IMG/VR virus record: IMGVR_UViG_3300004463_000226 | Span: 1 to 64,000 of that record | Reading direction: 5' to 3' (one strand) | Length of the DNA stretch: 64,000 nucleotides | Shown here: positions 47,316-63,073 of the stretch, in pieces | Position numbering within the stretch: position 1 is the first letter of the stretch | How the letters are laid out: every line of letters starts with the position of its first letter | The notes under the pieces: model-generated | Told to the model about the DNA's origin: nothing | The model's database searches: none | Seen by the model: only the letters and a program-made list of their open reading frames with translations | Program-made: the position numbers and the translations under genes

Positions 47316-48041
47316 TTACGCAATGTTTTCAAAAGCTTTAAAGTTAGTCCGTAGAAAATCCACTATCGTTTCATGGATTGTATCTATAGGTAACATTTCA
47401 CCATTAGGTGTACATTCAATACGATGCCAGCCGCAGTACTTAATAACACGGTCTCTGACACCATATACATCTTTTAGATGGTCAATATTTTCATGAATAT
47501 CTTCCATCGGTTTACCTTCATATCGCTTCATAATATTAGATACAGATATTTCAGGTTTTACATCCAAGTAGAACACTGCATCTGGATGAGGTAATCCTAA
47601 GTCAATATACTCAAGTTCCTCAATCCATTGAATATAACCTTCAATGTTATTCTTGTTAGTGAGGTTACCTGCTTGGTGAAGAATATTTGAAGTAGTATAT
47701 CTGTCACAGATTACATGTGTTCCTTCTTTGAGATGTTCAATGAGGGATTTACCGCTATACACCTGCTCAATAAATGATGAAACACGGTCAACAGCATAAA
47801 ACGATGATATCTGTTTAATATATTGGATATTGTCTTCCTGATGATACATGTTCTTAAACTGTCCGTCCAAGTATTTCCTAACAAGAACTGAAGATTCATT
47901 AGCATAGTTAGGAAATGATACAATAATAACAGGGATATTAGAAGCCTCTAGTCTTCTATATAACTTTATCGCCTGTGTATTTTTACCACTACCATCTAGC
48001 CCTTCAATGCCAATAACTCTTCCTGAATATCCTAGTGTCAT
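47316..48041 (-). CDS. tmk: Thymidylate (dTMP) kinase
   Basis: IEGLDGSGK.TQ P-loop, FP.Y, YAVDR, CDRY..SN, P.PD.VFYLD. Confidence 0.92.
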   Translation of the reverse strand: MTLGYSGRVIGIEGLDGSGKNTQAIKLYRRLEASNIPVIIVSFPNYANESSVLVRKYLDGQFKNMYHQEDNIQYIKQISSFYAVDRVSSFIEQVYSGKSLIEHLKEGTHVICDRYTTSNILHQAGNLTNKNNIEGYIQWIEELEYIDLGLPHPDAVFYLDVKPEISVSNIMKRYEGKPMEDIHENIDHLKDVYGVRDRVIKYCGWHRIECTPNGEMLPIDTIHETIVDFLRTNFKAFENIA

Positions 48042-48129
48042 GTTTATACAACTCCTTCTTTTTCTACTATTAAATAGTTAGGCTAGAAATAAAAAATAAA
48101 AAGGAGATGGGAATCCATCTCCTTGGTTA

Positions 48130-48456
48130 TTATAGAGAAAATACTTCAGCGTTGTATCTTGACTCAGCGTATTCAATACCTTCAGGATCATAAATAGTAA
48201 CAGCTATACCACGCATAATTTCACACTTCCAAAGATACACGCGGACGTTAATGATATCTCCGTTATGGTTCATTGCACCACAATCAACAATAGCCTTATC
48301 CCTCTTACCTTCTTTAATCTCATTATATGTCAGGATAGTATTAAAATTATCACATCTAACCATATCATGACCAAAAAATGTTTCTAAGAATCCGTGAGCA
48401 TATACTCCTTCCAATAAAGCTGCATCTCTAGTAGTGTCGTAATTGTAAATCATTTC
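48130..48456 (-). CDS. Hypothetical protein (early)
   Basis: The early motif at 48493 and the leader box lie inside the ORF-track N-terminus, so the true start follows the GGAGG RBS. Confidence 0.6.
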   Translation of the reverse strand, partial: EMIYNYDTTRDAALLEGVYAHGFLETFFGHDMVRCDNFNTILTYNEIKEGKRDKAIVDCGAMNHNGDIINVRVYLWKCEIMRGIAVTIYDPEGIEYAESRYNAEVFSL

Positions 48457-48509
48457 CATTCCTCCAAACAAATTATTATTGATTACACGTTTATAATATA
48501 TAAATGGCA

Positions 48510-48914
48510 TTACTGATTATACGATTCCCTTGAGGTATATATTTCATAGCGGGAACGTAGAAACCTTTCTTTTATAGGAGGATCAATGGTAAGGGCTGTT
48601 GACAATACATAAATATCATCTCTTTTTATTAACTTAGTAAATTCAGCCAAATACTGTCTAGATTTCCCTAGATCATCTAATATCTTAATAGTTACTTTAT
48701 CAAAGATATTTCCTTTGAGAAATAAATGGGTATTTTCATGAATATCAAAAAATAGGTTTTTATATATTGGAGCATTCTCACTAAATAGTACTAAGCCGTC
48801 TAATTCTATAGTCATCTCATAGTATGTATTTGGATCTGGTATTTCACGACACAAGCGAATTATTCCATGTTCAAATGGCTCATATCTATCTTTCTTCATT
48901 ACACTTGTTAACAT
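48510..48914 (-). CDS. Hypothetical protein
   Basis: AGGAGGGG RBS before MLTSV. Confidence 0.6.
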   Translation of the reverse strand: MLTSVMKKDRYEPFEHGIIRLCREIPDPNTYYEMTIELDGLVLFSENAPIYKNLFFDIHENTHLFLKGNIFDKVTIKILDDLGKSRQYLAEFTKLIKRDDIYVLSTALTIDPPIKERFLRSRYEIYTSRESYNQ

Positions 48915-48964
48915 GGTTTCCCCTCCTTTTAATAAAAAAATAAGCATCCGAAGATGCTCATTAG

Positions 48965-49423
48965 TTATCCATGTGAACGTTCATAATCACCAGTATATGT
49001 AAGTGGCTGACTCCATCTCCATTGGTTTATTGTTGAATACTGTCCATCGTTAATATCTACTATAATGAATGGAATATATTGATCATTGACTGTACAAGCG
49101 AGCACCAGATACATAGTCTGATCGTCTATTTTATATGGTCTAGTTTCCCTAAGAATGACAGTCTTTGTTTTTCTATCATATCCTTGACTTTCAATATACC
49201 TTAAAGGGAATGTAGGAATAAAGCCTTTATCTAATAGTGTTTTAAATAGATCTACTATTGTATCATATTTTGTATTAACTAACTCAATCTCATCGTCCAT
49301 CGTCAATATCTGCTGCGACTCAACTCCTTCAATAGTTGCTGGTGTTATAGGACAAAAGAAATATGAAAGTCGGTCTCCTTTCTCATACATTTCTAACATA
49401 GTTTTAAAGTTTTGAATAGGCAT
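48965..49423 (-). CDS. Hypothetical protein (early)
   Basis: Early motif at 49463; AGGAGG RBS. Confidence 0.65.
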   Translation of the reverse strand: MPIQNFKTMLEMYEKGDRLSYFFCPITPATIEGVESQQILTMDDEIELVNTKYDTIVDLFKTLLDKGFIPTFPLRYIESQGYDRKTKTVILRETRPYKIDDQTMYLVLACTVNDQYIPFIIVDINDGQYSTINQWRWSQPLTYTGDYERSHG

Positions 49424-49503
49424 ATTAAAGCCCTCCTTAGAATTATATTGTATTACCTATTTATAATATATACTTAAAAAGAATGACTATCCGAAGATAG
49501 TCA

Positions 49504-49761
49504 TTATATAGTTAGCTGATGTAGTGATTCCTTCTTAACCAGTTCATGCATTAACTCGACGATAAAATTCTTCGATGGACTGAATCCTAGAATGGTTTTG
49601 GCAGCTTCTTCATTATCTGGTTTCCATTGAAGATCGTCCATTTTAATATAGTGTAAATTAAAAGTTCGATGATAAAGATGCCATTTATCATCAATTGCAA
49701 CTTCGGAGATACATTTGTCTTCACAATCATTTACATATACTCTACGCCATTTAATATCCAT
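49504..49761 (-). CDS. Hypothetical protein
   Basis: GAGGTG RBS. Confidence 0.6.
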   Translation of the reverse strand: MDIKWRRVYVNDCEDKCISEVAIDDKWHLYHRTFNLHYIKMDDLQWKPDNEEAAKTILGFSPSKNFIVELMHELVKKESLHQLTI

Positions 49762-49770
49762 GTTTTCACC

Positions 49771-50139
49771 TCATGAAAATATCTTTTTCCAGAATGGTTT
49801 ATCATCTTCTTGTTTCCATTGATCAAGAATAGCCTGAGCCGATTCTTCAGTATGTGAATTCTGACTAAGTTTTTCTCCTAGTTTTTTATCAGTGTAACAG
49901 TTGAACTGATCGGTGTCAACATCATATGCTATTCTATAGATGTATAGGGTTTCACCAGCTAATACAATACTTTTCTTTTCCTTTAATTCAATTGATAGTT
50001 CTCTAGTTTCAAAAGGAATCCATTTACTCCATACACTTCGATTTATTTCATATACAAGACCACTTGCTCCATATGGAGCATTATATCTATCTGGTTTTAA
50101 TGTTATTACGTCCTCTTTACCAAAGAATACATATTTCAT
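49771..50139 (-). CDS. Hypothetical protein with a C-terminal amphipathic helix (KPFWKKIFS)
   Basis: AGGAG RBS. Confidence 0.6.
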   Translation of the reverse strand: MKYVFFGKEDVITLKPDRYNAPYGASGLVYEINRSVWSKWIPFETRELSIELKEKKSIVLAGETLYIYRIAYDVDTDQFNCYTDKKLGEKLSQNSHTEESAQAILDQWKQEDDKPFWKKIFS

Positions 50140-50145
50140 AAGTAT

Positions 50146-50664
50146 CTACTCCTTTAAGTTAATAAATAAGTACATTTTTTCTTTTACATCATGTAACTTA
50201 TCTCTGAACACATTAACAACATTTTTACTCTTGCTAATATATCCGATGAATTGCTTAAGGTTAATTACCTTTTTCAGTCTCTTTTTAGACCTAGCCGAGT
50301 GGAGTATCTCGTATGCTTCTAATAAGGTCTTTTTCTCTTTTTTCTTTAAATTATAGTCCTTAATATAGTGCTCTAGCTCAAGTAGTGTTGAGCTAATTCT
50401 TCCTCTTTCTTCTCCAATAATGTCTCTAACCATTTGTAATTCAACTCTTGTTAAAACCATATCTAGTTCATCATCATGCTCTAGATATAAGTCATCAAAA
50501 TCTACTAATAAACCATTAATGTGTTTCTCTTTCTTAATCTTGGAGCAGAAATACTCTTCTGTATCAAATTCCTTCTGTAACATATAGTTCTGAACATCTT
50601 TAGATGATTCACTAATAGCTACAACTTTCTGTGAACTGGTTTGTATAATGACAAATAGTTTCAT
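50146..50664 (-). CDS. Hypothetical protein, paralog family A
   Basis: GGAGG RBS before MKLFVII; same architecture as 44755 and 45492. Confidence 0.6.
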   Translation of the reverse strand: MKLFVIIQTSSQKVVAISESSKDVQNYMLQKEFDTEEYFCSKIKKEKHINGLLVDFDDLYLEHDDELDMVLTRVELQMVRDIIGEERGRISSTLLELEHYIKDYNLKKKEKKTLLEAYEILHSARSKKRLKKVINLKQFIGYISKSKNVVNVFRDKLHDVKEKMYLFINLKE

Positions 50665-50706
50665 ATTCCCATCCTCCAAAAAAATGAAGCTGAGTTTCAG
50701 CTTCAT

Positions 50707-51042
50707 TTATCTATGTGCTAATTTATCAGGATAAAGTTCTACAATCTCATTGTTGGGACGTAGAAACGCTTTTTTAATGTAATAGAACGTATATACTTCA
50801 TCATCTTTAAAGTCAGTCTTATATGTTGTATGTGCTGTAAACTCAATAGTTGTTCCATCTTTCTTACGGAACGTCACAACCATAAACTGATCATTGTTAG
50901 GCATGTCAGTATAGTATTGAAATGCCATATCCTCAGCAAGATGTTTCTTGTGTGGAATATTCATTGCTATCAGTACAGTAACTGAAATTAATGTAATTGT
51001 AGCTAGTATTCCGAATATAACCTTGTAAAATAAATTATTCAT
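50707..51042 (-). CDS. Membrane-anchored hypothetical protein
   Basis: N-terminal TM helix. Confidence 0.6.
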   Translation of the reverse strand: MNNLFYKVIFGILATITLISVTVLIAMNIPHKKHLAEDMAFQYYTDMPNNDQFMVVTFRKKDGTTIEFTAHTTYKTDFKDDEVYTFYYIKKAFLRPNNEIVELYPDKLAHR

Positions 51043-51074
51043 ATTGATTAACTCTCTCCCTTTTATGTCTTCAA

Positions 51075-51512
51075 TTATATGTTTGCGAGTGTTTTAAATT
51101 CTATATTGTAAGTAAGGGTATCTTTAAGATCTAAATTTAATCTAGTAATTCCTTCTTTTATATAAATTATAGGACATGCTTCTATTCCTTTATCATGTCG
51201 ATATACCCATACAAATAAAACATGGTCAAATCTCATTCGTCTTGTTGCTTTAGTTTTAGCATCTATTATCAGATACTCATCATCTAGTGCATAGTCTATA
51301 GTTTTATATTGACTATTGTTAATAATGAAGTGGTTCTCTGATAAATATTTTAAAAGATCTGTTATAGGTAAACCTTTATCAAGATCCCTAAATATTGAGT
51401 TAACTGATAATTGTCTTTTATGTATATCTGTAATATACATCACAGTTAATCCTATTTCCTTAGGATGTGGAAATTCCTCCCTGAATTTGAGTAAATTGTT
51501 TAACATTATCAT
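51075..51512 (-). CDS. Hypothetical protein (early)
   Basis: Early motif at 51570; GAGGT RBS. Confidence 0.6.
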   Translation of the reverse strand: MIMLNNLLKFREEFPHPKEIGLTVMYITDIHKRQLSVNSIFRDLDKGLPITDLLKYLSENHFIINNSQYKTIDYALDDEYLIIDAKTKATRRMRFDHVLFVWVYRHDKGIEACPIIYIKEGITRLNLDLKDTLTYNIEFKTLANI

Positions 51513-51589
51513 TTTTTACCTCTCCCTAATAAATATATTGGATACATAGCAGAACTATGTATCCAATATATAATATATAACTAAAATAA

Positions 51590-51732
51590 AAGAATAATCG
51601 GTCTAAGGGATTTGGACCAAATCAATGAGGGAAAACGGCGCGACTCATCGCAATCAATGTGTTCCACTAGTAAGAACACGAAAAGGTTTTATTCCCTGAT
51701 CGGTCCAGGAAATCCCAATAGTGTTATCTATT
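51590..51732 (-). ncRNA. Candidate ~140-nt structured RNA (long rod capped by a three-way junction)
   Basis: Nested stems GGGAUUU/AAAUCCC, GGACC/GGUCC, AUCA/UGAU, GGGAA/UUCCC and AAC/GUU enclose hairpins GUGUUC/GAACAC and GCGA/UCGC. AACT-N6-TA motif at 51732-51743; U-rich 3' end; no ORF. Confidence 0.65.
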
Positions 51733-51748
51733 AATTAATAGTTCAAAA

Positions 51749-52057
51749 TTATTTTCGTCTAAATGGTAATTTAAACTTCGGTCGAGTAGTCTTTGTAATG
51801 TACGGAATTAGCACATATACGATAACAATTATGCAAGGTAATATGATAAACCCAGCATTTATAATTAACTGAGCCACACCATATCCAAACTGGACTATAC
51901 CAAGTTCAGGTTCAATGAACACAAATGCAATTCCAATAATAACATTAAATATACCTTGTACAACTGTAACTCCAGCATATAATATAGTGGCACAGAATAA
52001 TGCAATTGACACATAACAAAGTAACTTCATCAATAATTTATCTCTAAATTTCTCCAT
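51749..52057 (-). CDS. Hypothetical membrane protein
   Basis: Two to three long hydrophobic segments. Confidence 0.65.
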   Translation of the reverse strand: MEKFRDKLLMKLLCYVSIALFCATILYAGVTVVQGIFNVIIGIAFVFIEPELGIVQFGYGVAQLIINAGFIILPCIIVIVYVLIPYITKTTRPKFKLPFRRK

Positions 52058-52063
52058 AATACA

Positions 52064-52552
52064 CTACTCCTTACCTTTACTTGGGAATAAATCAGGTCTT
52101 GCTCTTCTAGCAACTCTAGCCATAAGCATTTTTTGAATATCGTTAATAGCATTTGTAAATTCTTGTTGATCTAGTGGATGGGTCGGGTTCAGAGACATAT
52201 ATAAGTTATACATGTCAGAACTTAATTTAACAAGCTCTCCTTCAACTTCACGGGCATATATATCCTCCAATAGATCACATTTAGCAGCTTCATAATAATA
52301 TCCGTCCCTAGCATGAGATCCACACTTATCACATATGAAGATAGGGTCTCTCATTGAAATATTTCTTTCTTTATATACATAATGCTGTACTTCACCTCTT
52401 TCTTCAGACAACGTCATTCTTCTTTTACCTAAACAATTCTCATTGGAGCAAAACATTAGATAGTTACCTTCACTATCAAAACGATCGCCTCTTCCAATAG
52501 AATCAAATAAGTGAAGACCAAACAAATGACTCATATTATCGTCTATATTCAT
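52064..52552 (-). CDS. Zn-ribbon-containing hypothetical protein
   Basis: CSNENC...CDKCG plus a helical C-terminal HP.D..EF...I..IQ...AR domain. Confidence 0.6.
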   Translation of the reverse strand: MNIDDNMSHLFGLHLFDSIGRGDRFDSEGNYLMFCSNENCLGKRRMTLSEERGEVQHYVYKERNISMRDPIFICDKCGSHARDGYYYEAAKCDLLEDIYAREVEGELVKLSSDMYNLYMSLNPTHPLDQQEFTNAINDIQKMLMARVARRARPDLFPSKGKE

Positions 52553-52559
52553 AACAACA

Positions 52560-53102
52560 TCACTCCTTTAATAGTTTTATACATTGGTCTAACGATGCTC
52601 TTATTTCCTTCCTTATATTCTCTTGCTGTCTCGTACAAGCTCTTTTAATGGCTTTATAATCAATAACAGTTCTTTCATATAGACCAAAGAAATACTTGTA
52701 TTGTTTTATTACATCTTTTGATTGAAATCGTATTCTTATTATATTGGTTTTATCATTAGAGAAATCTATTATTTTGAAATCCACATAAAATATGTTCTCC
52801 CAGTCAGCATGAATACTGTCCCACTTAACTATACACGGATTTCTGTGTCTAATATTACCTGTAGCATAATTCTTATCTACCATTATAGCTAGTGAAGGTT
52901 CAAAATAATTTGTATCACCTTCAGTTATATCAACTGCTTGACTTGTATAAAATCTCCTGTTACTTTTTATTTCCAGAAATATCATTAGATTCACAAATGA
53001 AAATAAATCACTTACAATTGTATCCCTCATATTAAAACTATTGAATAGGTATCTTGTTTTTTCTATGTCCATAGGTTTTTTTAAAAAAGATGGTAGCTTC
53101 AC
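52560..53102 (-). CDS. Hypothetical protein
   Basis: GGAGG RBS, GTG start. Confidence 0.6.
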   Translation of the reverse strand: MKLPSFLKKPMDIEKTRYLFNSFNMRDTIVSDLFSFVNLMIFLEIKSNRRFYTSQAVDITEGDTNYFEPSLAIMVDKNYATGNIRHRNPCIVKWDSIHADWENIFYVDFKIIDFSNDKTNIIRIRFQSKDVIKQYKYFFGLYERTVIDYKAIKRACTRQQENIRKEIRASLDQCIKLLKE

Positions 53103-53209
53103 TTATTTCCCTCCAATGCAATGTATTCTTATAATAAAGTTAAGAGGATTATAAATACTTACTAAAAGACTTTAAATATAGACATAGGATTATTTTCCTA
53201 TGTCCGCCA

Positions 53210-53335
53210 GATAATATTATCTATTTTTCATTAAATAAATATATAATAACATTAATAAGTAAATAATACTATTAAATGTTATTATATATACTAATATTAT
53301 CTATTTATATAATCTCTATATATCTCATAAAAAAT
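53210..53335. other. Extremely AT-rich tract with a 15-bp inverted repeat (candidate DNA-unwinding element)
   Basis: ATATATAATAACATT (53239-53253) / AATGTTATTATATAT (53275-53289); ATTATCTATTT direct repeats at about 53216 and 53296. Confidence 0.5.
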
Positions 53336-53515
53336 CTCCAACATATATCTTTATATCCTTGCCCCCCCTATCCCCCCCATAACACCGTAAAAGGGTGCTA
53401 TGAGGAGAACAAGGTGTGTGTCTGGGATAAATAAAGATACGACGAATGAAAGTCCATCTTTTCATCAATGCGATATTTTTGTTGGGAGACAAATATATCT
53501 AAGTTTGACTAGATT
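53320..53515 (-). ncRNA. Candidate ~200-nt structured RNA with a 21-bp G-U-rich helix and a G7-AUA-G7 tract
   Basis: AACA-TTAAAG-TA at 53515-53526 (-). CCUUGUUCUCCUCAUAGCACC pairs fully with GGUGUUAUGGGGGGGAUAGGG only on the - strand (6 G-U pairs). Outer stems UAUCUUUAU/AUAAAGAUA and UCUCC(C)AACA/UGUUGGAGA. Confidence 0.7.
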
Positions 53516-53565
53516 ACTTTAATGTTCCCCATTAGTAAAAAATAATTGAACATTTTTTTGCTTAC

Positions 53566-53780
53566 AAAAACCCCTAATAGATCCAGCGAGGTCTATTAGG
53601 GAATTTTTGCATATGGGAAATGTGATAGAGCATGAGTACCAGTTTTTTATCTCCCAAGCAGTTAGATAAGAATTTGGTTCATGGTCATGGTTCTGAAACG
53701 TCCGCGTTTCAACAGTCTGTTTGATTTTAATATATGCCTTCTATACAGGGGCCTGGTAATACTTGGAAATATATCCAATT
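53566..53780 (-). ncRNA. Candidate ~215-nt multi-branched RNA with its own promoter and terminator
   Basis: AACA-TAATAG-TA at 53780-53791. Closing stem UACCAG/CUGGUA around three hairpins (including UGAAACG-CGGA-CGUUUCA and UUAUCU/AGAUAA). Terminator CCCUAAUAGA/UCUAUUAGGG plus a U-run; no ORF with an RBS. Confidence 0.65.
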
Positions 53781-53926
53781 ACTATTATGTTACTATAGTA
53801 ATTAAATAAAATTAAAAAAATAGACCTTGCCAATAAGCAAGGTCGAAATAATATAAAACATAGGAAGAAATAAATTTAAAATGGAGTTAAATCTATTACT
53901 TATCTTGTTTAATAATTAGTAACTTA

Positions 53927-54211
53927 TTATTTAGATTTCTTTATACAACCGTAATTATTACTAAACCCATTACCGTGCCAAGTTTCACTTACAACTCCCC
54001 ATTTACCACCCATTAATTTACACTTCTCTTTCTTTAATTCAATAATTTTGTTTTCATGTATAGCTAAAGGAATAAATGGTGCAAAGAAAGTAAATATTAA
54101 TACAATCATACCTATTGCACGAATATGTATATTTCTACCCATTAGAGCAATATACACTCCAATACCTGCGCTAATAAGTCCAAATATAAACCAAATTAAA
54201 AATGTTTTCAT
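53927..54211 (-). CDS. Small membrane protein
   Basis: Two TM helices and a C..MGG...Y.C tail. Confidence 0.6.
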   Translation of the reverse strand: MKTFLIWFIFGLISAGIGVYIALMGRNIHIRAIGMIVLIFTFFAPFIPLAIHENKIIELKKEKCKLMGGKWGVVSETWHGNGFSNNYGCIKKSK

Positions 54212-54256
54212 ATTATCATATCCTTTCTTAATACAAAAAATAAAAACCTTGTCGAA

Positions 54257-54703
54257 TTAACGACAAGGCGAAAAGATTTTGCGCTGAATCATTTTCATGA
54301 ATGCCAATATATCATCTTCTTTTACTTCAGTTTTAACTGTAATTTGTTTTCTGCTATTCATGAACTCTTCTCTACGTTTCATACGATCATTATGGCGTTT
54401 CTTGATGAAGTCAGGTGCATGTCTTTCCACCTTGGGATCTGTTATCGTTTGAATATTTAATACTCTTGGTTTTCTTCTAGTAAAAGCAGGCATTGTGTCT
54501 ATTTCTTTCATATTATATATCGGCTCTTCAATAACCTTTGTGATCACAATAGGTTCTTCAACTACTTCTACAGTTGTTACACCCATTACAAAATCAGCTT
54601 CAGCTTTAAGAGCCTCAGATTCACCTTGGAAGAATTTCTTTATGCTATCAGTATCAATCTTTGTTGTTGAAACTACTACATTTTTATTTTCGATAATTTT
54701 CAT
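54257..54703 (-). CDS. Hypothetical protein
   Basis: GGGAG RBS with a leader box at 54726. Confidence 0.6.
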   Translation of the reverse strand: MKIIENKNVVVSTTKIDTDSIKKFFQGESEALKAEADFVMGVTTVEVVEEPIVITKVIEEPIYNMKEIDTMPAFTRRKPRVLNIQTITDPKVERHAPDFIKKRHNDRMKRREEFMNSRKQITVKTEVKEDDILAFMKMIQRKIFSPCR

Positions 54704-54745
54704 TATCTATCACTCCCAATTTTTATTATTATTGATTAGTTGAAT

Positions 54746-55551: not shown

Positions 55552-55624
55552 AATGTTCATAGATTATAACATTTTCGTTCACCAACATTCTATTAAATCA
55601 TATTAGAATAAGAGGTGAACGAAA

Positions 55625-58600
55625 TTGCTATCTGTTTCGGAGATACCACACTTAAGGGTATATAAGCAAAGAACTATACTTCCTTTTGATAAAAAGGTTC
55701 AAAGTATGTATGGAATGGTATTTATCAATAACAATTCAATTGAGTCTGCTATTGAGTTAATGAATAGTCAGGCTATTTCTTCAGCTGGTAAATATCATAT
55801 CTATTATCTAGATAACCTTTATTCAGGAAGATTATTCGGTAAATCATACCGAGAAGTATTAAATAAAGAACGTGAAGAAATTTACGCTGAAGTTGAATCA
55901 AAGGCAAAGTTTATTAAGACAGAGAAATCTCTTATCTCAGTTAATAGCCGTAACATGTATTTTGATCTTCAGCACCACAATGATATTTTCTTTAGATTAG
56001 GAAATAGAACGTCTTCCTATATTAAGAAAGTGAATGATTATGCTTCTTTCCTTAAAGATATTATTAATGACGAAAGATTCTCTAAGTATAAAGAGAAGAT
56101 TGTCGCCATTAATGTCGATACATGGGTATCACAAGTTAGGAAGGAAATGACTAAAGGTTCTAAATTAGATAATCCTATTATGATTATCTATTATGCTCTT
56201 ATCAAATCTCTAGAGGAGTTTAAATCAATTGGTAATATTGATATTATTCTATACTCTGGAAGTTCAATGGTAAGAGTGAATCCTTCATTATGTGACAAGA
56301 AGTCGTACTATTTATATCGCCAAGAGGTTTCTAAACTTCATACTTCTATTACATTAGAAGATGAAGCCACCATTGAAAAGCAAGTTGAGCTCGATGCTGT
56401 TTATCAAAAAGTAGCCAAGAATTTCTCAGAGCACTTTAACTTCACTGGCGATGATGAAGAAGAAGGAGATGAGGAAATTGAGGAGAAAGCTAAAGAACGT
56501 CTTGAAGAGATTGTTGAAGAGGAGCCTGAAGAAGGTGTTACTGGTAGGGAACTAGAGAAGGAACTTACAAACAAGCTAATCAATGACGAGAAACTTCTCA
56601 AAGATGTTTACTCATATACTCAAGAGAAAAAGACTGGAAATTCAGCTGTTTCTTCAAAGCGCGACCAGGAACTAAGAGATAAACAAAAACAAATTAAAAT
56701 TGAAAATATGACTATTGAGGATATTAGAAATATTAACTCTAAGACAGTTAAACTGGACAAAGTTGATGTTTCTACTAAGGTTAAAACGACTAATAAGAAT
56801 GTTACGACAATTCATTATCCTCATTTTGAAAAGTCATATAATGAGCATTTATTGAAGAAGGATATGATTGATGTATTAATGCATCTTAATGACAGTTCAA
56901 TTCCTGTATTTGTCCGCAATATTGATGTTGTTGATAGTTCAGACGAATTGAACCATAAGGAAACTTATACTGTCGACTTAGAAGATGCTAATCGTGTTCG
57001 CCACCGTTTAAAATTCGATATGCCTAAATTTACTGACGATAAGTTCATGTACCTAAATGGTAATAAGAAACTCATTGTCAAGCAGCTTTATATGAAACCT
57101 ATTGTCAAAAATGGTCCAGATGAAGTTCAGGTTGTAGGTAGCTACAATAAGATCTTTATTCGCCGTCATGGAGGAAAGGTTTCTGCTAAAATAGAAAGAT
57201 TTAAAAAGGCTGTCTTAAAAGAAATAAAAGGTGTTGTTGTTAAATATGGCAATAATATTTCTACAAATAATGATTTTAAGACTACTATTGAGTACGATGA
57301 AATTTCTAAAGACATTACTTATATTCGTATAGGAGTTACGGAGTTTTACTTTAACCAAGAAGAAGTTCAGAAGTTGGTCAAAGACCGTAAGATAAAAATA
57401 AGTGATGATGAAATGTGTATTGGATTTATTAATAAAAAAGATCCAATCACTGTTAAATACGATACTCAACGCGTTGGTCCAGATATGGATATTGTTGACT
57501 TCATATTGTCAGTCGGTAAAGGTGAACTAGTTACTAGTTTCGATGCTGCAACAACAGGTAAGAAGTTTATCTATAGCCGCGCAACGGTTATGTCTAAACA
57601 AATCCCATTAGTTTTACTATTAGGGTACTTTGAAGGATTGAGTTCTGTTTTACGTAAAGCAGGCATTAAACATTACTTCACAGATACACGTCCTAAATTA
57701 GATGTTAATCAAGGTTCTATACAATTTGCAAATGGACATCTAGTATTTGATAGATATCCTTTTGAAAACTCATTACTAATGAATGCTTTTGCTGATATTC
57801 CAACCAGAGCATTCAACTATGAGGATTTTGATGAAAGAGAAGTTTACCTATCTATTTTTGACGTTATGTTTAAACAACGTAACTTAGGTAACGCTCTCTT
57901 GAACTACTATGAATTTATGATTGATCCTATTATGAAAGAAGTATTAGAGGATCTGAACTATCCAACAGGATTCGTAGAAGTTATGTTATATGCAAACGCA
58001 TTATTAACAGATAACTCATTTATTCGTGAGACTGATATGAGTAACTATCGTGTTCGTTCTAATGAGTTAATTAATGCATATCTATATAAAGCAATTGCTG
58101 ATGCTTATGGTTCTTATCGTGCAACAGCTAATAACAATAACCCAGTTAAAATCTCTATTCCACAAGATGCGATTACTAAGAAACTATTAATGTCTCAAAC
58201 TGTTGAAGACTATAGTATTCTTAACCCTATTGTTGAATTGGAGAAATCTCGGGCTATTACTCCTAAAGGACATTCTGGTATGAACTTGGATGATGCCTAT
58301 ACACAGGATAAACGTGCATTCGATCCATCTATGATGGGTATTATGGCAATGTCAACATCTCCTGATGCTAACTGTGGTATCGTTCGTGAGTTAACTCTAG
58401 AACCTAATATATTAAGTCCACGGGGTTATATTGACATCAAGAATGACAAACTTAAAGAATTAACTGATGCTAACTTGTTCTCTGCGGCAGAATTATTATC
58501 TCCTCTCGGAGTTTCAAGGGACGATAGTATCCGTACAGCAATGGCAACTAAACAATCAAAACACATTATCCCTATCGAGAAATCTTCTCCAGTTCTAATC

Positions 58601-59773
58601 TCAAATGGAGCTGAACAGATTATACATTATCATTTATCTAATGACTTTACAGTTGTTGCAAAGTATGATGGTAAAGTAGTGGAAGTCAATGAAGATGCAG
58701 GGGTAATGATTGTAGAATACAGCGATCCTAAAGGTATCCCACAGCCAGGTGGTGGAAAGAAAACAATACTCCATCAAGCTGTCGATATTAGTCCTAGAGT
58801 AGTGAAAAACGGTGCGGGTGGATTCTTCTTAACAAACCAACTTACAAGTAACTATAAAGTTGGTCAGAAGTTTAAGAAGAGTGATATTATTGCATCTGAT
58901 AAGAAATTCTTCACTAACTCAGATATTCATGGAAACCGATTCAATATCGGATCATTGCAGAAAGTAGCATGTATGAGTACGTTTGCAACTTATGAGGATT
59001 CTACATTTATTACTAAGAAACTGAGTGAAGAGATGGCTTCAGACATCGTAATGCAGAAAGCAATTACATTAGGTAAGAATGCCAATGTTGACTTTATTGT
59101 CAAAGTAGGTGACCATATTTCTGTAGGTGATGAATTAATCCGTTTCGAGTCTTCATTCGAAGACGATTCACTTAATAAGTTCTTAACACATATTGGAGAT
59201 GAGTTAAAAGAGGATATCAAGTCTCTAGGTAAAACTCCGATTAAATCAAAGTATACTGGAGAAGTTGTTGATATCAAAATATACTCTACAGTAGATCTAG
59301 ATGAGCTATCTCCAACATTGAGAAAGCTTGTTAGTGCATATTATGCTCAAATTAATAAAAAGAAAAAGACTATCGAGAAATACGATAAGTCTAATGAAGT
59401 TCATAAACTAGGAGTTCTATTAAATGAGCCTACTAGTAAGATTGAAACTAAAGATGGTAAGGTTAAAGGTATGGAAGTTGGGGAAGGTGTATTAATTGAG
59501 TTCTATATCAGCCATAAAGACATTATGGGTGTTGGTGATAAATTAACATTCTTCACAGCCTTAAAATCTATCATCGGGGATGTTATCCCAGAAGGTTACG
59601 AACCATATTCTCAATTCCGTCCTGAAGAAGAGATATCTTCATTCATAGCACCTGGAGCTGTATTAGCACGTATGACACCATCTATCTTGTTAACAATGTT
59701 TGGTAATAAGGTATTGGTTGAGCTTAAACGCCAATTACAGGAAATATATACAGGTAAACCATGGAAACCGTAA
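55625..59773 (+). CDS. Phage RNA polymerase beta subunit (large N-terminal/middle part), probably virion RNAP
   Basis: FMYLNG...Q, TSPDANCGIVRELT (TPEG.N.G equivalent), DD..RTAMATKQSKH, YEDS, GDKL...K and ARMT motifs. About 450-aa N-terminal extension; late-type promoter at 55584; size similar to phiKZ gp178-type subunits. Confidence 0.92.
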   Translation: MLSVSEIPHLRVYKQRTILPFDKKVQSMYGMVFINNNSIESAIELMNSQAISSAGKYHIYYLDNLYSGRLFGKSYREVLNKEREEIYAEVESKAKFIKTEKSLISVNSRNMYFDLQHHNDIFFRLGNRTSSYIKKVNDYASFLKDIINDERFSKYKEKIVAINVDTWVSQVRKEMTKGSKLDNPIMIIYYALIKSLEEFKSIGNIDIILYSGSSMVRVNPSLCDKKSYYLYRQEVSKLHTSITLEDEATIEKQVELDAVYQKVAKNFSEHFNFTGDDEEEGDEEIEEKAKERLEEIVEEEPEEGVTGRELEKELTNKLINDEKLLKDVYSYTQEKKTGNSAVSSKRDQELRDKQKQIKIENMTIEDIRNINSKTVKLDKVDVSTKVKTTNKNVTTIHYPHFEKSYNEHLLKKDMIDVLMHLNDSSIPVFVRNIDVVDSSDELNHKETYTVDLEDANRVRHRLKFDMPKFTDDKFMYLNGNKKLIVKQLYMKPIVKNGPDEVQVVGSYNKIFIRRHGGKVSAKIERFKKAVLKEIKGVVVKYGNNISTNNDFKTTIEYDEISKDITYIRIGVTEFYFNQEEVQKLVKDRKIKISDDEMCIGFINKKDPITVKYDTQRVGPDMDIVDFILSVGKGELVTSFDAATTGKKFIYSRATVMSKQIPLVLLLGYFEGLSSVLRKAGIKHYFTDTRPKLDVNQGSIQFANGHLVFDRYPFENSLLMNAFADIPTRAFNYEDFDEREVYLSIFDVMFKQRNLGNALLNYYEFMIDPIMKEVLEDLNYPTGFVEVMLYANALLTDNSFIRETDMSNYRVRSNELINAYLYKAIADAYGSYRATANNNNPVKISIPQDAITKKLLMSQTVEDYSILNPIVELEKSRAITPKGHSGMNLDDAYTQDKRAFDPSMMGIMAMSTSPDANCGIVRELTLEPNILSPRGYIDIKNDKLKELTDANLFSAAELLSPLGVSRDDSIRTAMATKQSKHIIPIEKSSPVLISNGAEQIIHYHLSNDFTVVAKYDGKVVEVNEDAGVMIVEYSDPKGIPQPGGGKKTILHQAVDISPRVVKNGAGGFFLTNQLTSNYKVGQKFKKSDIIASDKKFFTNSDIHGNRFNIGSLQKVACMSTFATYEDSTFITKKLSEEMASDIVMQKAITLGKNANVDFIVKVGDHISVGDELIRFESSFEDDSLNKFLTHIGDELKEDIKSLGKTPIKSKYTGEVVDIKIYSTVDLDELSPTLRKLVSAYYAQINKKKKTIEKYDKSNEVHKLGVLLNEPTSKIETKDGKVKGMEVGEGVLIEFYISHKDIMGVGDKLTFFTALKSIIGDVIPEGYEPYSQFRPEEEISSFIAPGAVLARMTPSILLTMFGNKVLVELKRQLQEIYTGKPWKP

Positions 59774-59823
59774 AAATATAAAAAAATAAGAGGATATAGT
59801 GTCCTCTTATTTTTCTTTTTCTC

Positions 59824-60072
59824 TTAAAGGTGTTTAAACTCAATAGCAATAAGTTTATCTGGTTTAAAACATATTGTATTGAAATCCGTAATTGGTAAGT
59901 CAATAAATCCATATTTGTTTGGCTGAGTCATCGTTGTCTGTATAGTATTTTTTCTCTTTAAAGCTTCTGCTTCTTTAGTAGACCCTGCTGGTACAATGAT
60001 ATTATACTGTTTAATAATAGAATAGTCACCTTCAAAAACAAATTTAACTGTTAATACAAAACTTTCTGACAT
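59824..60072 (-). CDS. Hypothetical protein
   Basis: GGAGGT RBS; convergent terminator at 59785-59812. Confidence 0.6.
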   Translation of the reverse strand: MSESFVLTVKFVFEGDYSIIKQYNIIVPAGSTKEAEALKRKNTIQTTMTQPNKYGFIDLPITDFNTICFKPDKLIAIEFKHL

Positions 60073-60094
60073 ATTAATTACCTCCCGTTTCTAA

Positions 60095-60700
60095 TTAAGC
60101 TTTTGTAAAATATGTACTTCCCTCAGCATCATGCTCTTTAGCACAACTATCACATAAATCAAGATTCTTCATATCACCCCCTTTAATAAAAAGCCGTTGA
60201 GTAGCAGCGTCTTTTCTAAAACAACCATCACATAATACAACATCTTCATTGATTCTAGCCAACCATTTTACATCGACAATTTTATTACCGATATGATATT
60301 TTCCTTGAACAACATCAGCACCAGTTCCTTTATGTTGTTTTAATTCTTGTATCTCTATAGGAGATAAACCAACACGAGGCTCTTGTTCATAATTAAATGG
60401 ACCACATATGACTTCTAATTGTGTAATAGCCTCCTTCATAGAAACAAATCCAACTTTACCATCCATTAAAAATAACCATATAGGACGTGTACTAGTAACA
60501 ACCGCTAATTTATAAGCATCATCACTATCCACATAAATACAATGAGGGTATACTCCTTTCATGCCTTGATCTTCGATACCGTGTTCAGGATGATAAGATT
60601 TTAGACGCTGAGTTTTACCTTCAGCATCTACCCAATAGCGGCTACCTTTGGATGTTTCGAACGTTAATACTGGTTTGATATCTAAGTTTAAATTTTTCAT
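60095..60700 (-). CDS. Hypothetical protein with a C-terminal Zn finger
   Basis: FETSKGS.Y...G.T.R.K domain plus CDGC...LCDSC. Confidence 0.6.
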   Translation of the reverse strand: MKNLNLDIKPVLTFETSKGSRYWVDAEGKTQRLKSYHPEHGIEDQGMKGVYPHCIYVDSDDAYKLAVVTSTRPIWLFLMDGKVGFVSMKEAITQLEVICGPFNYEQEPRVGLSPIEIQELKQHKGTGADVVQGKYHIGNKIVDVKWLARINEDVVLCDGCFRKDAATQRLFIKGGDMKNLDLCDSCAKEHDAEGSTYFTKA

Positions 60701-60717
60701 TTTATTTATCCCCTTTA

Positions 60718-61500
60718 TTATAAGTATTTTTCGATTGCATGAAACCAGTGATGAGTATCTGATTTACCAAGTAATTTTTCTTTACCAGATATGAAAATAA
60801 CGTCATGTTTTTCAGGTTCGCCTGTTTTAAGTGTCTCAAATATACGCTCTGCATTATTAACTTGTATCTTATAAACAAATGCAGCATGAAATAGGTCATT
60901 AAACTTATTAAACGTATTAACAAAGCAAATAGGTTCTTTAGGAACAAATAGCTGTTTCTTATGCTTTATTTCTTCGTCAACCTCTTTCTGAATAGCTAAT
61001 CTAAGAATATCTATTTGACTGGTTTGATACGCATCAAGACTATAATCAACATGTCCACCAATCATTGTTATTGTACGATCTTCCTTCTTTCTCAGCACAA
61101 TATAGTCCTTACCATCAGTAATAAATGCGAATACACCAATTTGTTTCCAATTAAAATTGTACTCGGCTTCTTCACGCGAGATGAAACTAAATTGATCATC
61201 TTCAAAGAATGTTTTTGATGAGCTTATTGCATTTACCCTGAAAAAATCAGTTACTGAATCGTATCTACTTAAACTCTTAGCAGTTGTCATATCTGAAAAC
61301 TTATTAGGAACACACAAAACGAATTGACCAGGATATTTCTTTTCGATTTTCTTAGAAATAGCCTTACGAATCTTATGATGCTTATCACTACCAAACGGAT
61401 ATTTTTTTAACTTATTGATTAGCTCAGGTAACTGTGGACCTTCTGGTGCTTTAATTCCTTTACGAATTTCCTTGATTTTTTCTTTTGATTTATTTCCCAT
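60718..61500 (-). CDS. Nudix-fold hydrolase, paralog of 41436-42716
   Basis: WKQI, IGGHVD...IQKEVDEEI, FHAAFVY, GE..KH; start MGNK after GGAGGT. Confidence 0.75.
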   Translation of the reverse strand: MGNKSKEKIKEIRKGIKAPEGPQLPELINKLKKYPFGSDKHHKIRKAISKKIEKKYPGQFVLCVPNKFSDMTTAKSLSRYDSVTDFFRVNAISSSKTFFEDDQFSFISREEAEYNFNWKQIGVFAFITDGKDYIVLRKKEDRTITMIGGHVDYSLDAYQTSQIDILRLAIQKEVDEEIKHKKQLFVPKEPICFVNTFNKFNDLFHAAFVYKIQVNNAERIFETLKTGEPEKHDVIFISGKEKLLGKSDTHHWFHAIEKYL

Positions 61501-61563
61501 TTTTAAGACCTCCAATGTTTTATTACAAGAAAAATAAGGGCTGGAAGCTCCAACCCTTTTATA

Positions 61564-61968
61564 TTATTGAACAGCTTCTTCTTTTTTGATGCGGTGGAAA
61601 CAAGATACTCTATCTTTAGGAAACTCACGGGAACGTACATCTTTAATCAGTCCAGACACAGCTTCAACAATCAATCTCATTGGATCACGTTTAGTTGCTT
61701 TAGCAATCTTATACACACTACCGACATAAATTGTGACACTGTTAAGCTCTTTCAAAGTTTTACGACCAGTTTCAAGGTTTTCTGAGCAGCTACCATTAAA
61801 ACCAAAAGCAACAAGTCGCTCAGCATTTTCAACTTCACGAACAGCATAATGATTTGACTTAGCATTGATCTGAACAGCAGCATTATAAGTATCGAATACT
61901 TCTTTATCAGAATTTATCATTTGATGAGCTACCACTGCCATTTGTTTTAATTTTAAAGATTTGAACAT
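61564..61968 (-). CDS. Hypothetical protein (early)
   Basis: Early motif at 62026, leader box at 61987, AGGGGG RBS. Confidence 0.65.
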   Translation of the reverse strand: MFKSLKLKQMAVVAHQMINSDKEVFDTYNAAVQINAKSNHYAVREVENAERLVAFGFNGSCSENLETGRKTLKELNSVTIYVGSVYKIAKATKRDPMRLIVEAVSGLIKDVRSREFPKDRVSCFHRIKKEEAVQ

Positions 61969-62125
61969 AATTAATTCCCCCTAGGTTTATTATTGATTTT
62001 GAATATATTATTTATATTCACTATTATAATATATAGGTGATATTGCCGACTTTACGAATTAACATTTATTACCAGTAAAACAGTTATGTAAGAAATACAT
62101 ATCAATGAGAGGGGAACATACTAAA

Positions 62126-63073
62126 ATGGGTCAATTTGATAAAGAATGGAATAGGGTATTAGAGAATATTATGTTAAATGGAGTATGGCAGAAAGAAGAA
62201 CATGTCCGTGCTAAATGGGACGATGGTACTCCAGCTCCAGCTAAATTTGTTACAGGAGAAAAGATGGTATTTGATAATAGTGAAGCTCTAGTCCCAACGA
62301 CTAAAGAAATTAAACGTAAGAGTCCATTACGTGAACTAAAATGGATCTGGTTCCTTAAATCAAACGTGGTTCAGAAACTTCGTGATTTGGGAAGTAGTAT
62401 TTGGGATAAATGGGAAATTAAAGAAGGTGAATGGACAGGTACAATTGGTCCAGCTTACGGACATCAATTAGGTAAACAATGTAGGAAATTTCCAGTAGAA
62501 AAACTTCGCTGGGAACATCTACATCCTGAGCATGCTGTTGAGTTAAGACAAATGATAGAGGATGCTTTAGCACAAGGTTTTATTATTAAATATGTAATGC
62601 TGGATCAGGTAGACTTCCTCATCCAAGGTCTTCTTACTAACCCTGGTTCTCGCCGATATATTCTATCACTATGGGGTATTGAAGATCTTGACTACATGGC
62701 ACTAGAACCATGTGTATGGAAGACAGGGTGGCAATATGTTGATGGTAAAATTGATTTAATAACTGGTGTACGTTCAAATGATATCTGTGTAGGAAATCCT
62801 TTTAATGTGTTTCAATATCAGGTGTTATGGAATCTTATCTGTCAGGTAACAGGTCACACACCAGGGAAGATTCAATTTGATCTCGATAATCCACATATTT
62901 ATGACAGACACATTCCTGAGGCTATGAAACAGTTAGTGTATCCTCAAAAAACAGCTCCAAAACTTTGGATTAATCCTGATATTAAAAACTTTTATGACTT
63001 TAATCCAGATACTGATGTTAAATTGATTGACTATGAACACGGTCCAGACCGTTACTATGAGGTGGCTGAATAA
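62126..63073 (+). CDS. thyA: Thymidylate synthase (B. subtilis ThyA / phi3T ThyP3 type)
   Basis: M.QFDK, R.KW.DGTPA, IWD.W, IG.AYG.Q, SRR, ALEPCV (catalytic Cys), RSND...GNPFNVFQY, HIYDRH. Confidence 0.96.
   Translation: MGQFDKEWNRVLENIMLNGVWQKEEHVRAKWDDGTPAPAKFVTGEKMVFDNSEALVPTTKEIKRKSPLRELKWIWFLKSNVVQKLRDLGSSIWDKWEIKEGEWTGTIGPAYGHQLGKQCRKFPVEKLRWEHLHPEHAVELRQMIEDALAQGFIIKYVMLDQVDFLIQGLLTNPGSRRYILSLWGIEDLDYMALEPCVWKTGWQYVDGKIDLITGVRSNDICVGNPFNVFQYQVLWNLICQVTGHTPGKIQFDLDNPHIYDRHIPEAMKQLVYPQKTAPKLWINPDIKNFYDFNPDTDVKLIDYEHGPDRYYEVAE

What the first reader, a model, noticed from the sequence alone, without database searches (positions are those of the whole stretch)
47316..63073. AR9-type late promoters in a phage equipped to make thymine DNA
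Known: AR9/PBS1 have uracil-substituted DNA, and AR9 non-virion RNAP recognises AACA-N6-TA promoters through template-strand uracils opposite the AA. Seen: this phage uses the same consensus yet encodes a complete dTTP route: thyA with the dUMP-specifying Asn in GNPFN, dfrA (22354) and tmk. Inference: a T-DNA relative whose promoter-specificity subunit reads thymine, a natural comparison for how uracil-dependent recognition evolved.
Basis: partly seen in the sequence, partly recalled or inferred. Interest (0 to 1): 0.6.

Follow-up and report, generated by a model that had tools for sequence, protein, structure and literature searches.

The report
Thymine-DNA cousins of uracil phage AR9
This uncultivated 234-kb jumbo phage uses the same promoter words as the uracil-DNA phage AR9 but, like all its close relatives, makes its own thymidylate, so it almost certainly has ordinary thymine DNA and offers a natural test of how uracil-dependent promoter reading evolved.

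Summary
AACA-N6-TA is not enriched in the raw window (62 sites against 79 expected). It is strongly enriched, with exact spacing and orientation, upstream of genes across the 234-kb genome: 65 sense sites against 14.7 expected, a profile like AR9's own. An AR9-type early motif, TATATATTAT, is also present and dominates the stated coordinates.

thyA, dfr and tmk are real, and a ComEB-type dCMP deaminase completes the route. ThyA is a true thymidylate synthase, not a hydroxymethylase.

- None of five uracil-type relatives has ThyA, ThyX, DHFR, Tmk or dUTPase.
- All 16 surveyed genomes of this metagenomic clade carry ThyA or ThyX, never both.

The gp226 homologue lies at genome 129402-130892, outside the window. 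Its 2.1bis helix is remodelled. The uracil-discriminating Val206 is Leu here and varies across the clade. Tyr210 is replaced by Gln in nearly all members.

Thymine DNA and thymine-tolerant promoter reading are therefore well supported by inference, but unproven: there is no base analysis and no TSS data. This is a new variant of a known system.

The parts
62126..63073 (+). thyA, a thymidylate synthase of the ThyA1/ThyP3 type. The ORF opens at 62105; the start at 62126 fits the RBS and the alignment to B. subtilis ThyA.
   Evidence: Pfam 3.8e-57 and TIGR03284 above cut-off. Best solved structure is B. subtilis ThyA 1B02, 2.6e-76, with the catalytic Cys-Val, RSND..GNPFN and C-terminal EVA conserved. 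Identity to phi3T ThyP3 is 50% in the MAFFT alignment (44% by tblastn); to SPO1 gp29 hydroxymethylase it is 20%.
62079..62090 (+). AACAGTTATGTA, a late-type AACA-N6-TA site 35 nt upstream of the thyA start. The predicted TSS is the final A.
47316..48041 (-). tmk, a divergent thymidylate-kinase-family protein.
   Evidence: Pfam Thymidylate_kin 2.6e-22. It falls below the NCBIfam dTMP-kinase cut-offs. PDB hits are all thymidylate kinases, at 1e-10 or weaker. The family is present in 12 of 15 relatives and in 0 of 5 uracil-type phages.
22354..22869 (-). dfr, a dihydrofolate reductase. It lies downstream of a DHH phosphoesterase gene (22871-23887) that carries an AACA-N6-TA site at 23925-23936(-).
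   Evidence: Pfam DHFR_1 6e-57 and phrog_316.
55584..55595 (+). AACATTCTATTA, a late-type site 29 nt upstream of the virion RNAP beta gene.
   Evidence: The AR9 homologue g189 is a late gene (PMC5312081).
55625..59773 (+). Virion RNA polymerase beta-like subunit, homologue of AR9 g189.
   Evidence: tblastn to AR9 152969-154534, 38% identity, 7.6e-87.
19112..20527 (-). Non-virion RNA polymerase beta' N-terminal subunit, homologue of AR9 g270.
   Evidence: tblastn 31% identity, 2.9e-38.
24815..26104 (-). Virion RNA polymerase subunit, homologue of AR9 g264.
   Evidence: tblastn 36% identity, 5.6e-80.
48493..48500 (-). Early-type promoter core TATATTAT (AR9 early consensus AAATATATATTAT-N6-G), heading the operon in which tmk lies. 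Similar sites lie at 49463, 51570, 55303 and 62026 (-) and at 63333 (+).
   Evidence: 54 intergenic copies genome-wide, 2.87/kb against 0.17/kb in coding DNA. AR9 consensus from PMC5312081.
23925..23936 (-). AACATAATTATA, a late-type site 37 nt upstream of the DHH-dfr gene pair.

Best explanation
The window belongs to a complete 234-kb metagenomic jumbo phage. It is a distant relative of the uracil-DNA phages AR9, PBS1, S6, LPJP1 and phiR1-37, sharing 22-45% protein identity with them.

Like AR9, it carries two multisubunit RNA polymerases and two promoter classes:
- An early class, TATATATTAT-N6-G, presumably read by the injected virion polymerase.
- A late class, AACA-N6-TA, presumably read by the non-virion polymerase through its sigma-like subunit, the gp226 homologue at genome 129402-130892.

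Unlike AR9, it makes dTTP: dCMP deaminase, then ThyA with DHFR recycling the folate, then Tmk. Its DNA therefore most likely contains thymine.

The sigma-like subunit keeps the gp226 fold and the partner residues in the beta subunit, but its 2.1bis helix is remodelled. Here the helix reads N-R-L-I-W-E-Q-R-E; the clade consensus is N-K-x-[I/L]-W-x-Q-R-E, against S-D-x-V-I-W-x-Y in uracil-type phages. The same AACA word can thus be recognised on thymine-containing template DNA.

Shown: the genes, the motif statistics, the comparative distribution and the residue changes.
Inferred: T in virion DNA, TSS use, template-strand reading and how the methyl groups are accommodated.
For: Relationship to AR9. 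63 of 291 proteins match AR9, including all four non-virion polymerase core subunits and four virion polymerase pieces. The gp226 homologue matches at E 2e-19. hhalign gives 99.8% probability over 441 columns. The AF2 model (pLDDT 84.7) has AR9 gp226 7S01_A as its top Foldseek hit, E 1.6e-18.

Promoter motifs. Both motifs are enriched as strongly as in AR9, where they are mapped promoters (PMC5312081). They are also enriched in relatives: pooled loci 2.41/kb against 0.64/kb, G011 3.26 against 0.49, G015 4.93 against 0.84.

Thymidylate genes.
- ThyA, ThyX, DHFR, Tmk and dUTPase are found in 0 of 5 in AR9, phiR1-37, S6, LPJP1 and BpSp.
- In the clade, ThyA occurs in 7 genomes and ThyX in 9, so 16 of 16 have exactly one type.
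- DHFR occurs only alongside ThyA. Tmk is in 13 of 16 and dUTPase in 3 of 16.
- Absence of thymidylate synthase, Thy1 and dUTPase is the published genomic signature of U-DNA (PMC7824862).
- ThyA is a genuine synthase.
- The deaminase is of the cellular dCMP-deaminase type: 2HVV at 5e-39.

gp226 residues. Val206 and Tyr/Phe210 are invariant in 4 of 4 uracil-type phages. In 116 clade homologues position 206 is V33, L21, T14, R10, P9, G9 and others, and position 210 is Gln in 107. The gp105 pocket residues R363 and K375 are conserved.
Against: - There is no direct base-composition or transcript data.
- The Val206 equivalent here is Leu, which still has a C-beta. By the published steric argument it would not obviously admit a 5-methyl group (PMC9209446).
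- The phage keeps a distant homologue (27% identity) of AR9 g151. AR9 g151 is probably the orthologue of the PBS1 dTMP phosphatase, though that orthology was not verified. The homologue lies at genome 134232-134957 and occurs in 12 of 15 relatives (PMC12697855). Its specificity is unknown.
- Tmk is too divergent to assign a substrate.
- No dUTPase, UDG or ribonucleotide reductase was found in this genome.
Confidence: 0.75

Rival explanations
1. The DNA still contains uracil, as in AR9. On this view thyA, dfr and tmk serve some other purpose, for example manipulating host nucleotide pools, and the polymerase remains uracil-dependent.
For: All characterised members of the supergroup have dU DNA (PMC7598289, PMC8460666). 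Leu at the Val206 position keeps a C-beta. A homologue of the AR9 HAD nucleotidase is retained. No dUTPase is present in this genome.
Against: A thymidylate synthase drains dUMP and would work against dU substitution. 16 of 16 clade genomes keep one, through non-orthologous replacement, against 0 of 5 uracil-type phages. Three relatives encode dUTPase. The deaminase is not of the Dcd_PBS1 type. No Ugi homologue was found. The conserved uracil-type signature V206 plus Y/F210 is lost.
Confidence: 0.07
2. The DNA contains 5-hydroxymethyluracil or a hypermodified thymidine. On this view the ThyA homologue is a dUMP hydroxymethylase and Tmk is an hmdUMP kinase.
For: The thymidylate synthase family includes hydroxymethylases. 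Tmk is divergent and below equivalog cut-offs. A nucleotidase homologue could remove dTMP.
Against: ThyA passes the thymidylate synthase equivalog model and is 44-50% identical to phi3T ThyP3, against 20% to SPO1 gp29, which lacks the PFN motif. SPO1 gp29 and T4 gp42 score 78 and 58 bits on the Pfam model, against 194 here. DHFR accompanies ThyA and often lies next to it in relatives, which only makes sense if dihydrofolate is produced. ThyX replaces ThyA in 9 relatives, and dTMP synthesis is the only activity the two families share.
Confidence: 0.06
3. The DNA contains thymine, but AACA-N6-TA is read differently from AR9. It may be read on the non-template strand or as duplex DNA, or partly by other factors, so the subunit does not read thymine in AR9-like template-strand pockets.
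For: Tyr210, which stacks on -9G in AR9, is Gln or Lys throughout the clade, and position 206 is unconstrained. This suggests different pocket geometry. The AR9 gp226 N-terminal domain also binds the complementary non-template AACA (PMC9209446).
Against: The consensus, the spacing and the distance to genes are unchanged. gp105 R363 and K375, which form the -10 pocket, are conserved, as are I207 and W208.
Confidence: 0.12

Closest known systems
Bacillus phage AR9/PBS1 non-virion RNA polymerase with gp226, and its AACA-N6-TA/G late promoters (PMC5449584, PMC9209446, PMC5312081)
   Same: - Split beta/beta' core plus a gp226-like fifth subunit with the same fold.
- The same late consensus, spacing and position before genes.
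- The same early consensus core, TATATTAT-N6-G.
- An early promoter directly upstream of the gp226 gene in both phages.
- gp105 R363 and K375, and gp226 I207 and W208, are conserved.
   Different: - The genome encodes thymidylate synthesis, whereas AR9 and four other uracil-type relatives encode none.
- gp226 Val206 is Leu here and variable across the clade. Tyr210 is Gln and Asp204 is Asn.
- No Ugi and no Dcd_PBS1-type deaminase.
- Protein identities are only 22-45%.
AR9 gp226 V206G engineered mutant (PMC9209446)
   Same: A gp226 variant that accepts T at -10 while keeping the same promoter word. It shows that a small change in the 2.1bis helix can relax uracil dependence.
   Different: - The natural clade rarely uses Gly (9 of 116) and changes several helix positions at once.
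- The engineered enzyme still needed U at -11. A thymine-DNA phage must tolerate T at both positions.
phiKZ-type jumbo phages (thymine DNA, two multisubunit RNAPs, gp68 sigma-like subunit, PhuZ tubulin, chimallin nucleus)
   Same: - Thymine DNA.
- Virion plus non-virion polymerases.
- A structurally related fifth subunit (8QUE_B is the third Foldseek hit).
- A tubulin-family gene is present.
   Different: - The phiKZ late promoter is TATG, not AACA-N6-TA.
- No chimallin homologue is detectable by sequence here.
- The tubulin is closest to phage c-st TubZ.

Membership tests
AR9/PBS1-type two-RNAP jumbo phages (supergroup) | Split beta and beta' homologues for both a virion and a non-virion RNA polymerase. 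| tested here: met
   Homologues of AR9 g105, g089, g154 and g270 (non-virion) and of g264, g189, g145 and g078 (virion), at E from 1e-29 to 1e-119.
AR9/PBS1-type two-RNAP jumbo phages (supergroup) | A gp226-family promoter-specificity subunit. | tested here: met
   blastp 2e-19. phrog_25005 8e-28. hhalign 99.8%. Foldseek 7S01_A 1.6e-18.
AR9-type late promoter (AACA-N6-TA/G, TSS at the last base) | The consensus, with exact 6-nt spacing, is enriched upstream of genes and co-oriented with them. | tested here: met
   65 sense sites, 16 antisense, 14.7 expected. The N5 and N7 spacings are at background. The profile equals AR9's.
AR9-type late promoter (AACA-N6-TA/G, TSS at the last base) | Transcripts start at the terminal A/G. 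| not testable with these tools
No RNA data were obtained.
Uracil-dependent template-strand recognition (AR9 mechanism) | gp226 Val206 and aromatic residue 210 in the 2.1bis helix are conserved. | tested here: not met
   Leu222 and Gln226 here. Position 206 is variable and position 210 is Gln in 107 of 116 clade homologues. The uracil-type phages are 4 of 4 for V plus Y/F.
dU-DNA phages | Absence of thymidylate synthase (ThyA or ThyX) and of dUTPase (PMC7824862). | tested here: not met
   ThyA is present and genuine. 16 of 16 clade genomes have ThyA or ThyX, against 0 of 5 uracil-type phages.
dU-DNA phages | A dCTP deaminase of the Dcd_PBS1 type, plus a dT-nucleotide-removing enzyme (NT5C, YfbR-HD or Ham1 family) (PMC12697855). 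| tested here: inconclusive
   The deaminase is ComEB/S. mutans-like. The Pfam families NT5C, YfbR and Ham1 are not found above cut-off. A 27%-identical homologue of the AR9 g151 nucleotidase does exist.
dU-DNA phages | A uracil-DNA glycosylase inhibitor (Ugi). | tested here: inconclusive
   There is no blast match to AR9 Ugi. Ugi-like proteins are small and diverge fast, so absence by blast is weak evidence.
Thymidylate synthase ThyA (EC 2.1.1.45) | Catalytic Cys, phosphate-binding Arg, DxxxGxPFN with the dUMP-specifying Asn, and an equivalog score above cut-off. | tested here: met
   TIGR03284 120.8 against 108.35. Alignment to 1B02 shows these motifs.

The most novel reading that the evidence does not exclude
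Uracil dependence of AR9-type promoter recognition is a derived speciality. A large, uncultivated radiation of AR9-like jumbo phages with thymine DNA uses the same early and late promoter words. More than 240 sigma-like subunit homologues were found, on contigs up to 258-264 kb. Some sit in a bin labelled as Clostridia, and the phage tubulin is closest to that of a Clostridium phage.

Their sigma-like subunit would read thymines in the template strand through a remodelled 2.1bis helix. Having lost uracil as the mark of self DNA, they would need another way to keep the polymerase off host DNA. One possibility is a tubulin-organised compartment, since a TubZ/PhuZ-type tubulin is present in 12 of 16 of them and in 0 of 5 uracil-type phages.
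Probability: 0.4. Interest if true: 0.8.

Novelty: new variant of a known kind. Interest (0 to 1): 0.66.

Why it matters
AR9 is the only system where a multisubunit RNA polymerase is known to read a promoter through uracils in the template strand. The published view is that this lets nucleus-less jumbo phages tell their own DNA from the host's. So far, thymine tolerance has been shown only in one engineered point mutant.

A natural clade with the same promoter words, a recognisable gp226 homologue and clade-wide thymidylate synthesis supplies three things:
- Hundreds of natural sequences for working out which changes switch U-reading to T-reading.
- A polarity for the change. With phiKZ as a thymine outgroup, uracil dependence looks derived once.
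- A sharper question: how does a 6-base promoter stay specific once the uracil mark is gone?

It also gives a simple genomic rule for calling dU against dT genomes among uncultivated AR9-like phages: presence of ThyA or ThyX, together with the 2.1bis helix signature.

Tried and rejected
- Megablast of the region against cultured phages found no match.
- tblastn of the gp226 homologue against the phage collection found no match, although a local blast finds AR9 gp226. I take this as a sensitivity or filter issue.
- A single-protein pattern scan of IMG/VR found nothing. The profile version worked.
There is no TSS or DNA-run evidence.
- phiKZ chimallin gp54 gave no match in any genome. This is uninformative.
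- The 595-aa early protein at 37815-39602 was examined as a possible shell protein. The PDB and Atlas look-ups gave nothing usable.
- Pfam found nothing in ten small early-block ORFs.
- There are no tRNAs or Rfam families in the window.
- A weak dUTPase-like match at 28079-28210 (12.6 bits) was not confirmed by Pfam scanning of the ORF.
- The idea that the uracil-type clade is nested inside the thymidylate-synthase-bearing lineages appears in the best tree but is not established. The AU test does not reject the alternative, p 0.42.
- The big representative search, complex prediction and read laying were not used.


Full report
**What the window is.** The window is the first 64 kb of a single 234,335-bp contig with 33.7% G+C. 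IMG/VR classes the contig as a virus with direct terminal repeats, and CheckV rates it 100% complete. It has no near relative among cultured phages. A six-frame comparison with Bacillus phage AR9 (KU878088, fetched) gives matches for 63 of about 291 predicted proteins, at 21-66% identity and mostly 22-45%.

The matches include all four core pieces of the non-virion RNA polymerase:
- beta-N at 184278-185957
- beta-C at 196482-198752
- beta'-N at 19112-20527, inside the window
- beta'-C at 146140-148125

They also include four pieces of the virion polymerase, two of them in the window (24815-26104 and 55625-59773). The major capsid protein is only 22-27% identical to those of AR9/PBS1, BpSp, the staphylococcal S6 group, Listeria LPJP1 and Yersinia phiR1-37. 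It matches nothing else in the cultured-phage collection. The phage is therefore a deep, uncultivated branch of the AR9 supergroup.

**The motif.** Counted naively, AACA-N6-TA is not enriched in the window: 62 sites against 79 +/- 8 in shuffles. The signal is positional.
- Across the genome, 80 sites lie in the 8% of sequence that is intergenic: 4.25/kb against 0.69/kb in coding DNA. Changing the spacer to 5 or 7 drops the intergenic density to 1.2-1.3/kb.
- In the 80 nt upstream of 290 genes there are 65 sites in the sense orientation and 16 antisense. A first-order Markov model of the same windows gives 14.7 +/- 3.8, with a maximum of 27 in 300 runs.
- The motif ends a median of 29 nt before the start codon.
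- The same crude pipeline on AR9 gives a very similar profile: 3.25/kb against 0.86/kb, with N5 at 0.69 and N7 at 0.97. In AR9, 94 mapped late TSSs carry AACA-N6-TA/G (PMC5312081).

A second enriched word, TATATATTAT, is followed six bases later by G. It has 54 intergenic copies, 2.87/kb against 0.17/kb, and it matches the AR9 early consensus AAATATATATTAT-N6-G.

Well-placed late sites there are few:
- 55584-55595, before the virion polymerase beta gene
- 62079-62090, before thyA
- 55355, 53515 and 53780

Sigma-70-like sites are fewer than chance in this stretch, and terminator-like hairpins are more frequent. No transcript data could be obtained, so the sites remain predicted promoters.

**The dTTP route.**
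- thyA (62126-63073) matches Pfam at 3.8e-57 and passes the NCBIfam thymidylate synthase equivalog cut-off. Its best solved relative is B. subtilis ThyA (2.6e-76), with the catalytic Cys-Val, RSND..GNPFN and the C-terminal EVA conserved, plus a 32-residue insert. It is 44% (tblastn) to 50% (MAFFT alignment) identical to phi3T ThyP3. It is about 20% identical to the SPO1 dUMP hydroxymethylase, which lacks the PFN motif, and 26% over part of its length to T4 dCMP hydroxymethylase. On the Pfam model those two hydroxymethylases score 78 and 58 bits, against 194 here.
- dfr (22354-22869) is a clear DHFR (6e-57).
- tmk (47316-48041) is a divergent member of the thymidylate kinase family. It falls below equivalog cut-offs, so its substrate is inferred.
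- A dCMP deaminase at genome 178058-178606 is closest to the S. mutans and cyanophage enzymes rather than to the PBS1 dCTP deaminase lineage (PMC12697855).

thyA and the DHH-dfr pair sit behind AACA-N6-TA sites. tmk lies in an operon headed by an early-type site.

**Comparison across relatives.** None of AR9, phiR1-37, S6, LPJP1 or BpSp contains a ThyA, ThyX, DHFR, Tmk-family or dUTPase gene. A word search with the gp226 homologue found more than 240 metagenomic relatives at 43-85% identity, some on contigs of 200-258 kb. A profile scan of IMG/VR returned 45 loci. Fifteen large records were searched whole, with these results:

| Gene family | Distribution in the clade |
|---|---|
| ThyA | 6 of 15 relatives, plus this genome |
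| ThyX | the other 9 relatives |
| DHFR | only in ThyA-bearing genomes |
| Tmk | 12 of 15 relatives |
| dUTPase | 3 of 15 relatives |

So 16 of 16 genomes carry exactly one kind of thymidylate synthase. The ThyA genes belong to at least two subtypes. The function has therefore been kept through repeated replacement. Iyer et al. give the absence of thymidylate synthase, Thy1 and dUTPase as the genomic condition for uracil DNA (PMC7824862). This clade fails that condition throughout.

**The promoter-specificity subunit.** The gp226 homologue is at genome 129402-130892, outside the window, with an early-type promoter just upstream as in AR9. Homology is secure: hhalign gives 99.8% over 441 columns, and the AlphaFold model has AR9 gp226 as its top structural hit, followed by phiKZ gp68.

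In AR9, uracil specificity at -10 rests on Val206. A V206G change lets T in. Tyr210 stacks on -9G, and gp105 R363 and K375 complete the pocket (PMC9209446).
- Here gp105 R363 and K375 are conserved, as are I207 and W208 of gp226.
- The helix reads S-D-x-V-I-W-x-Y/F in all four uracil-type phages examined. Here it reads N-R-L-I-W-E-Q-R-E, and the clade consensus is N-K-x-[I/L]-W-x-Q-R-E.
- Position 206 is Leu here. Across 116 homologues it is V33, L21, T14, R10, P9, G9 and others. Position 210 is Gln in 107.

The residues that define uracil reading are thus released from constraint exactly where thymidylate synthase appears. Leu at 206 does not by itself explain how a methyl group fits. The pocket must differ in ways that sequence cannot show.

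**Evolutionary direction.** A tree of the polymerase beta-C N-terminal region, rooted with phiKZ, recovers the uracil-type phages as one group (support 89/92). That group is sister to two ThyX-bearing lineages, G011 and G015, and lies among the other thymidylate-synthase-bearing lineages. The backbone is weak, and an AU test does not reject a single thymine clade (p 0.42). G011 and G015 also show both promoter words at AR9-like densities. Under either topology, with a thymine outgroup, the simplest reading is this: the common ancestor already used AACA-N6-TA, and uracil dependence arose once.

**Caveats.**
- There is no chemistry and no RNA evidence.
- The phage keeps a 27%-identical homologue of AR9 g151, which is probably the counterpart of the PBS1 dTMP phosphatase. 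This homologue occurs in 12 of 15 relatives. Its specificity is unknown, and neither protein is recognised by the NT5C Pfam model.
- This genome has no dUTPase, UDG or ribonucleotide reductase.
- A soft point in favour of ordinary DNA: native LPJP1 DNA defeated a standard library preparation until a uracil-tolerant method was used (PMC8460666). This clade, by contrast, is assembled abundantly from routine metagenomes.

**Novelty.** In the literature searched, uracil is presented as the way nucleus-less AR9-like phages direct their polymerase to their own DNA. I found no description of a thymine-DNA AR9-like lineage with AACA-N6-TA promoters. I rate this a new variant of a known system and of real interest to the field. 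The probability that the DNA is thymine-containing and that the sites are functional late promoters is about 0.75.

Noticed in passing
window 13884-16055 (-): A full-length polyphosphate kinase 1, with all four PPK domains (E down to 2e-69). This is an unusual phage gene. It is preceded by both an early-type site (16060-16067) and an AACA-N6-TA site (16105-16116). It could supply NTPs or dNTPs from polyphosphate.
   Followed up: partly
G000 202751-203881 (-), L122:850-1980: A TubZ/PhuZ-type tubulin. Its best solved relatives are the phage c-st TubZ entries 4XCQ and 3V3T. The tubulin family is present in 12 of 16 thymidylate-synthase-bearing genomes, in phiKZ, and in 0 of 5 uracil-type phages. 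phiKZ chimallin gives no sequence match, so whether a compartment forms remains open.
   Followed up: partly
window 53103-53926: An 824-bp stretch without a convincing ORF. It holds two minus-strand AACA-N6-TA sites (53515, 53780) and terminator-like hairpins. There is no tRNA and no Rfam match. It may encode a small non-coding transcript.
   Followed up: partly
G000 134232-134957 (-), L006:9233-9958: A distant homologue (27% identity) of the AR9 g151 5'(3')-deoxyribonucleotidase, which belongs to the likely family of the PBS1 dTMP phosphatase. It is conserved in 12 of 15 relatives although they make thymidylate. Its substrate is unknown.
   Followed up: partly
relatives G001, G002, G004, G008, G011, G015: ThyX sits in 420-490-aa ORFs with two Thy1 matches each, so it appears duplicated or fused. 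ThyA genes in the clade belong to at least two subtypes, which implies repeated acquisition.
   Followed up: no
L084-L094 and L071/L073: The non-virion polymerase beta-C genes of G001, G002, G004, G008, G013 and BpSp are split into separate pieces. This suggests introns or inteins, as are known in AR9 polymerase genes.
   Followed up: no
L017 (Listeria phage LPJP1 216550-217797): The gp226 homologue in the deposited LPJP1 record carries an in-frame TAA.
   Followed up: no
window 48041-48130 (-): tmk follows a strong terminator-like hairpin (48124-48101). A near-consensus AACTATTTAATA lies 27 nt before its start, so it may have its own weak late-type promoter as well as early read-through.
   Followed up: no
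window 1-34 and G000 234302-234335: The first 34 bases of the contig recur at its end, inside a 2,000-aa ORF. This fits a circularly permuted or terminally redundant assembly.
   Followed up: no
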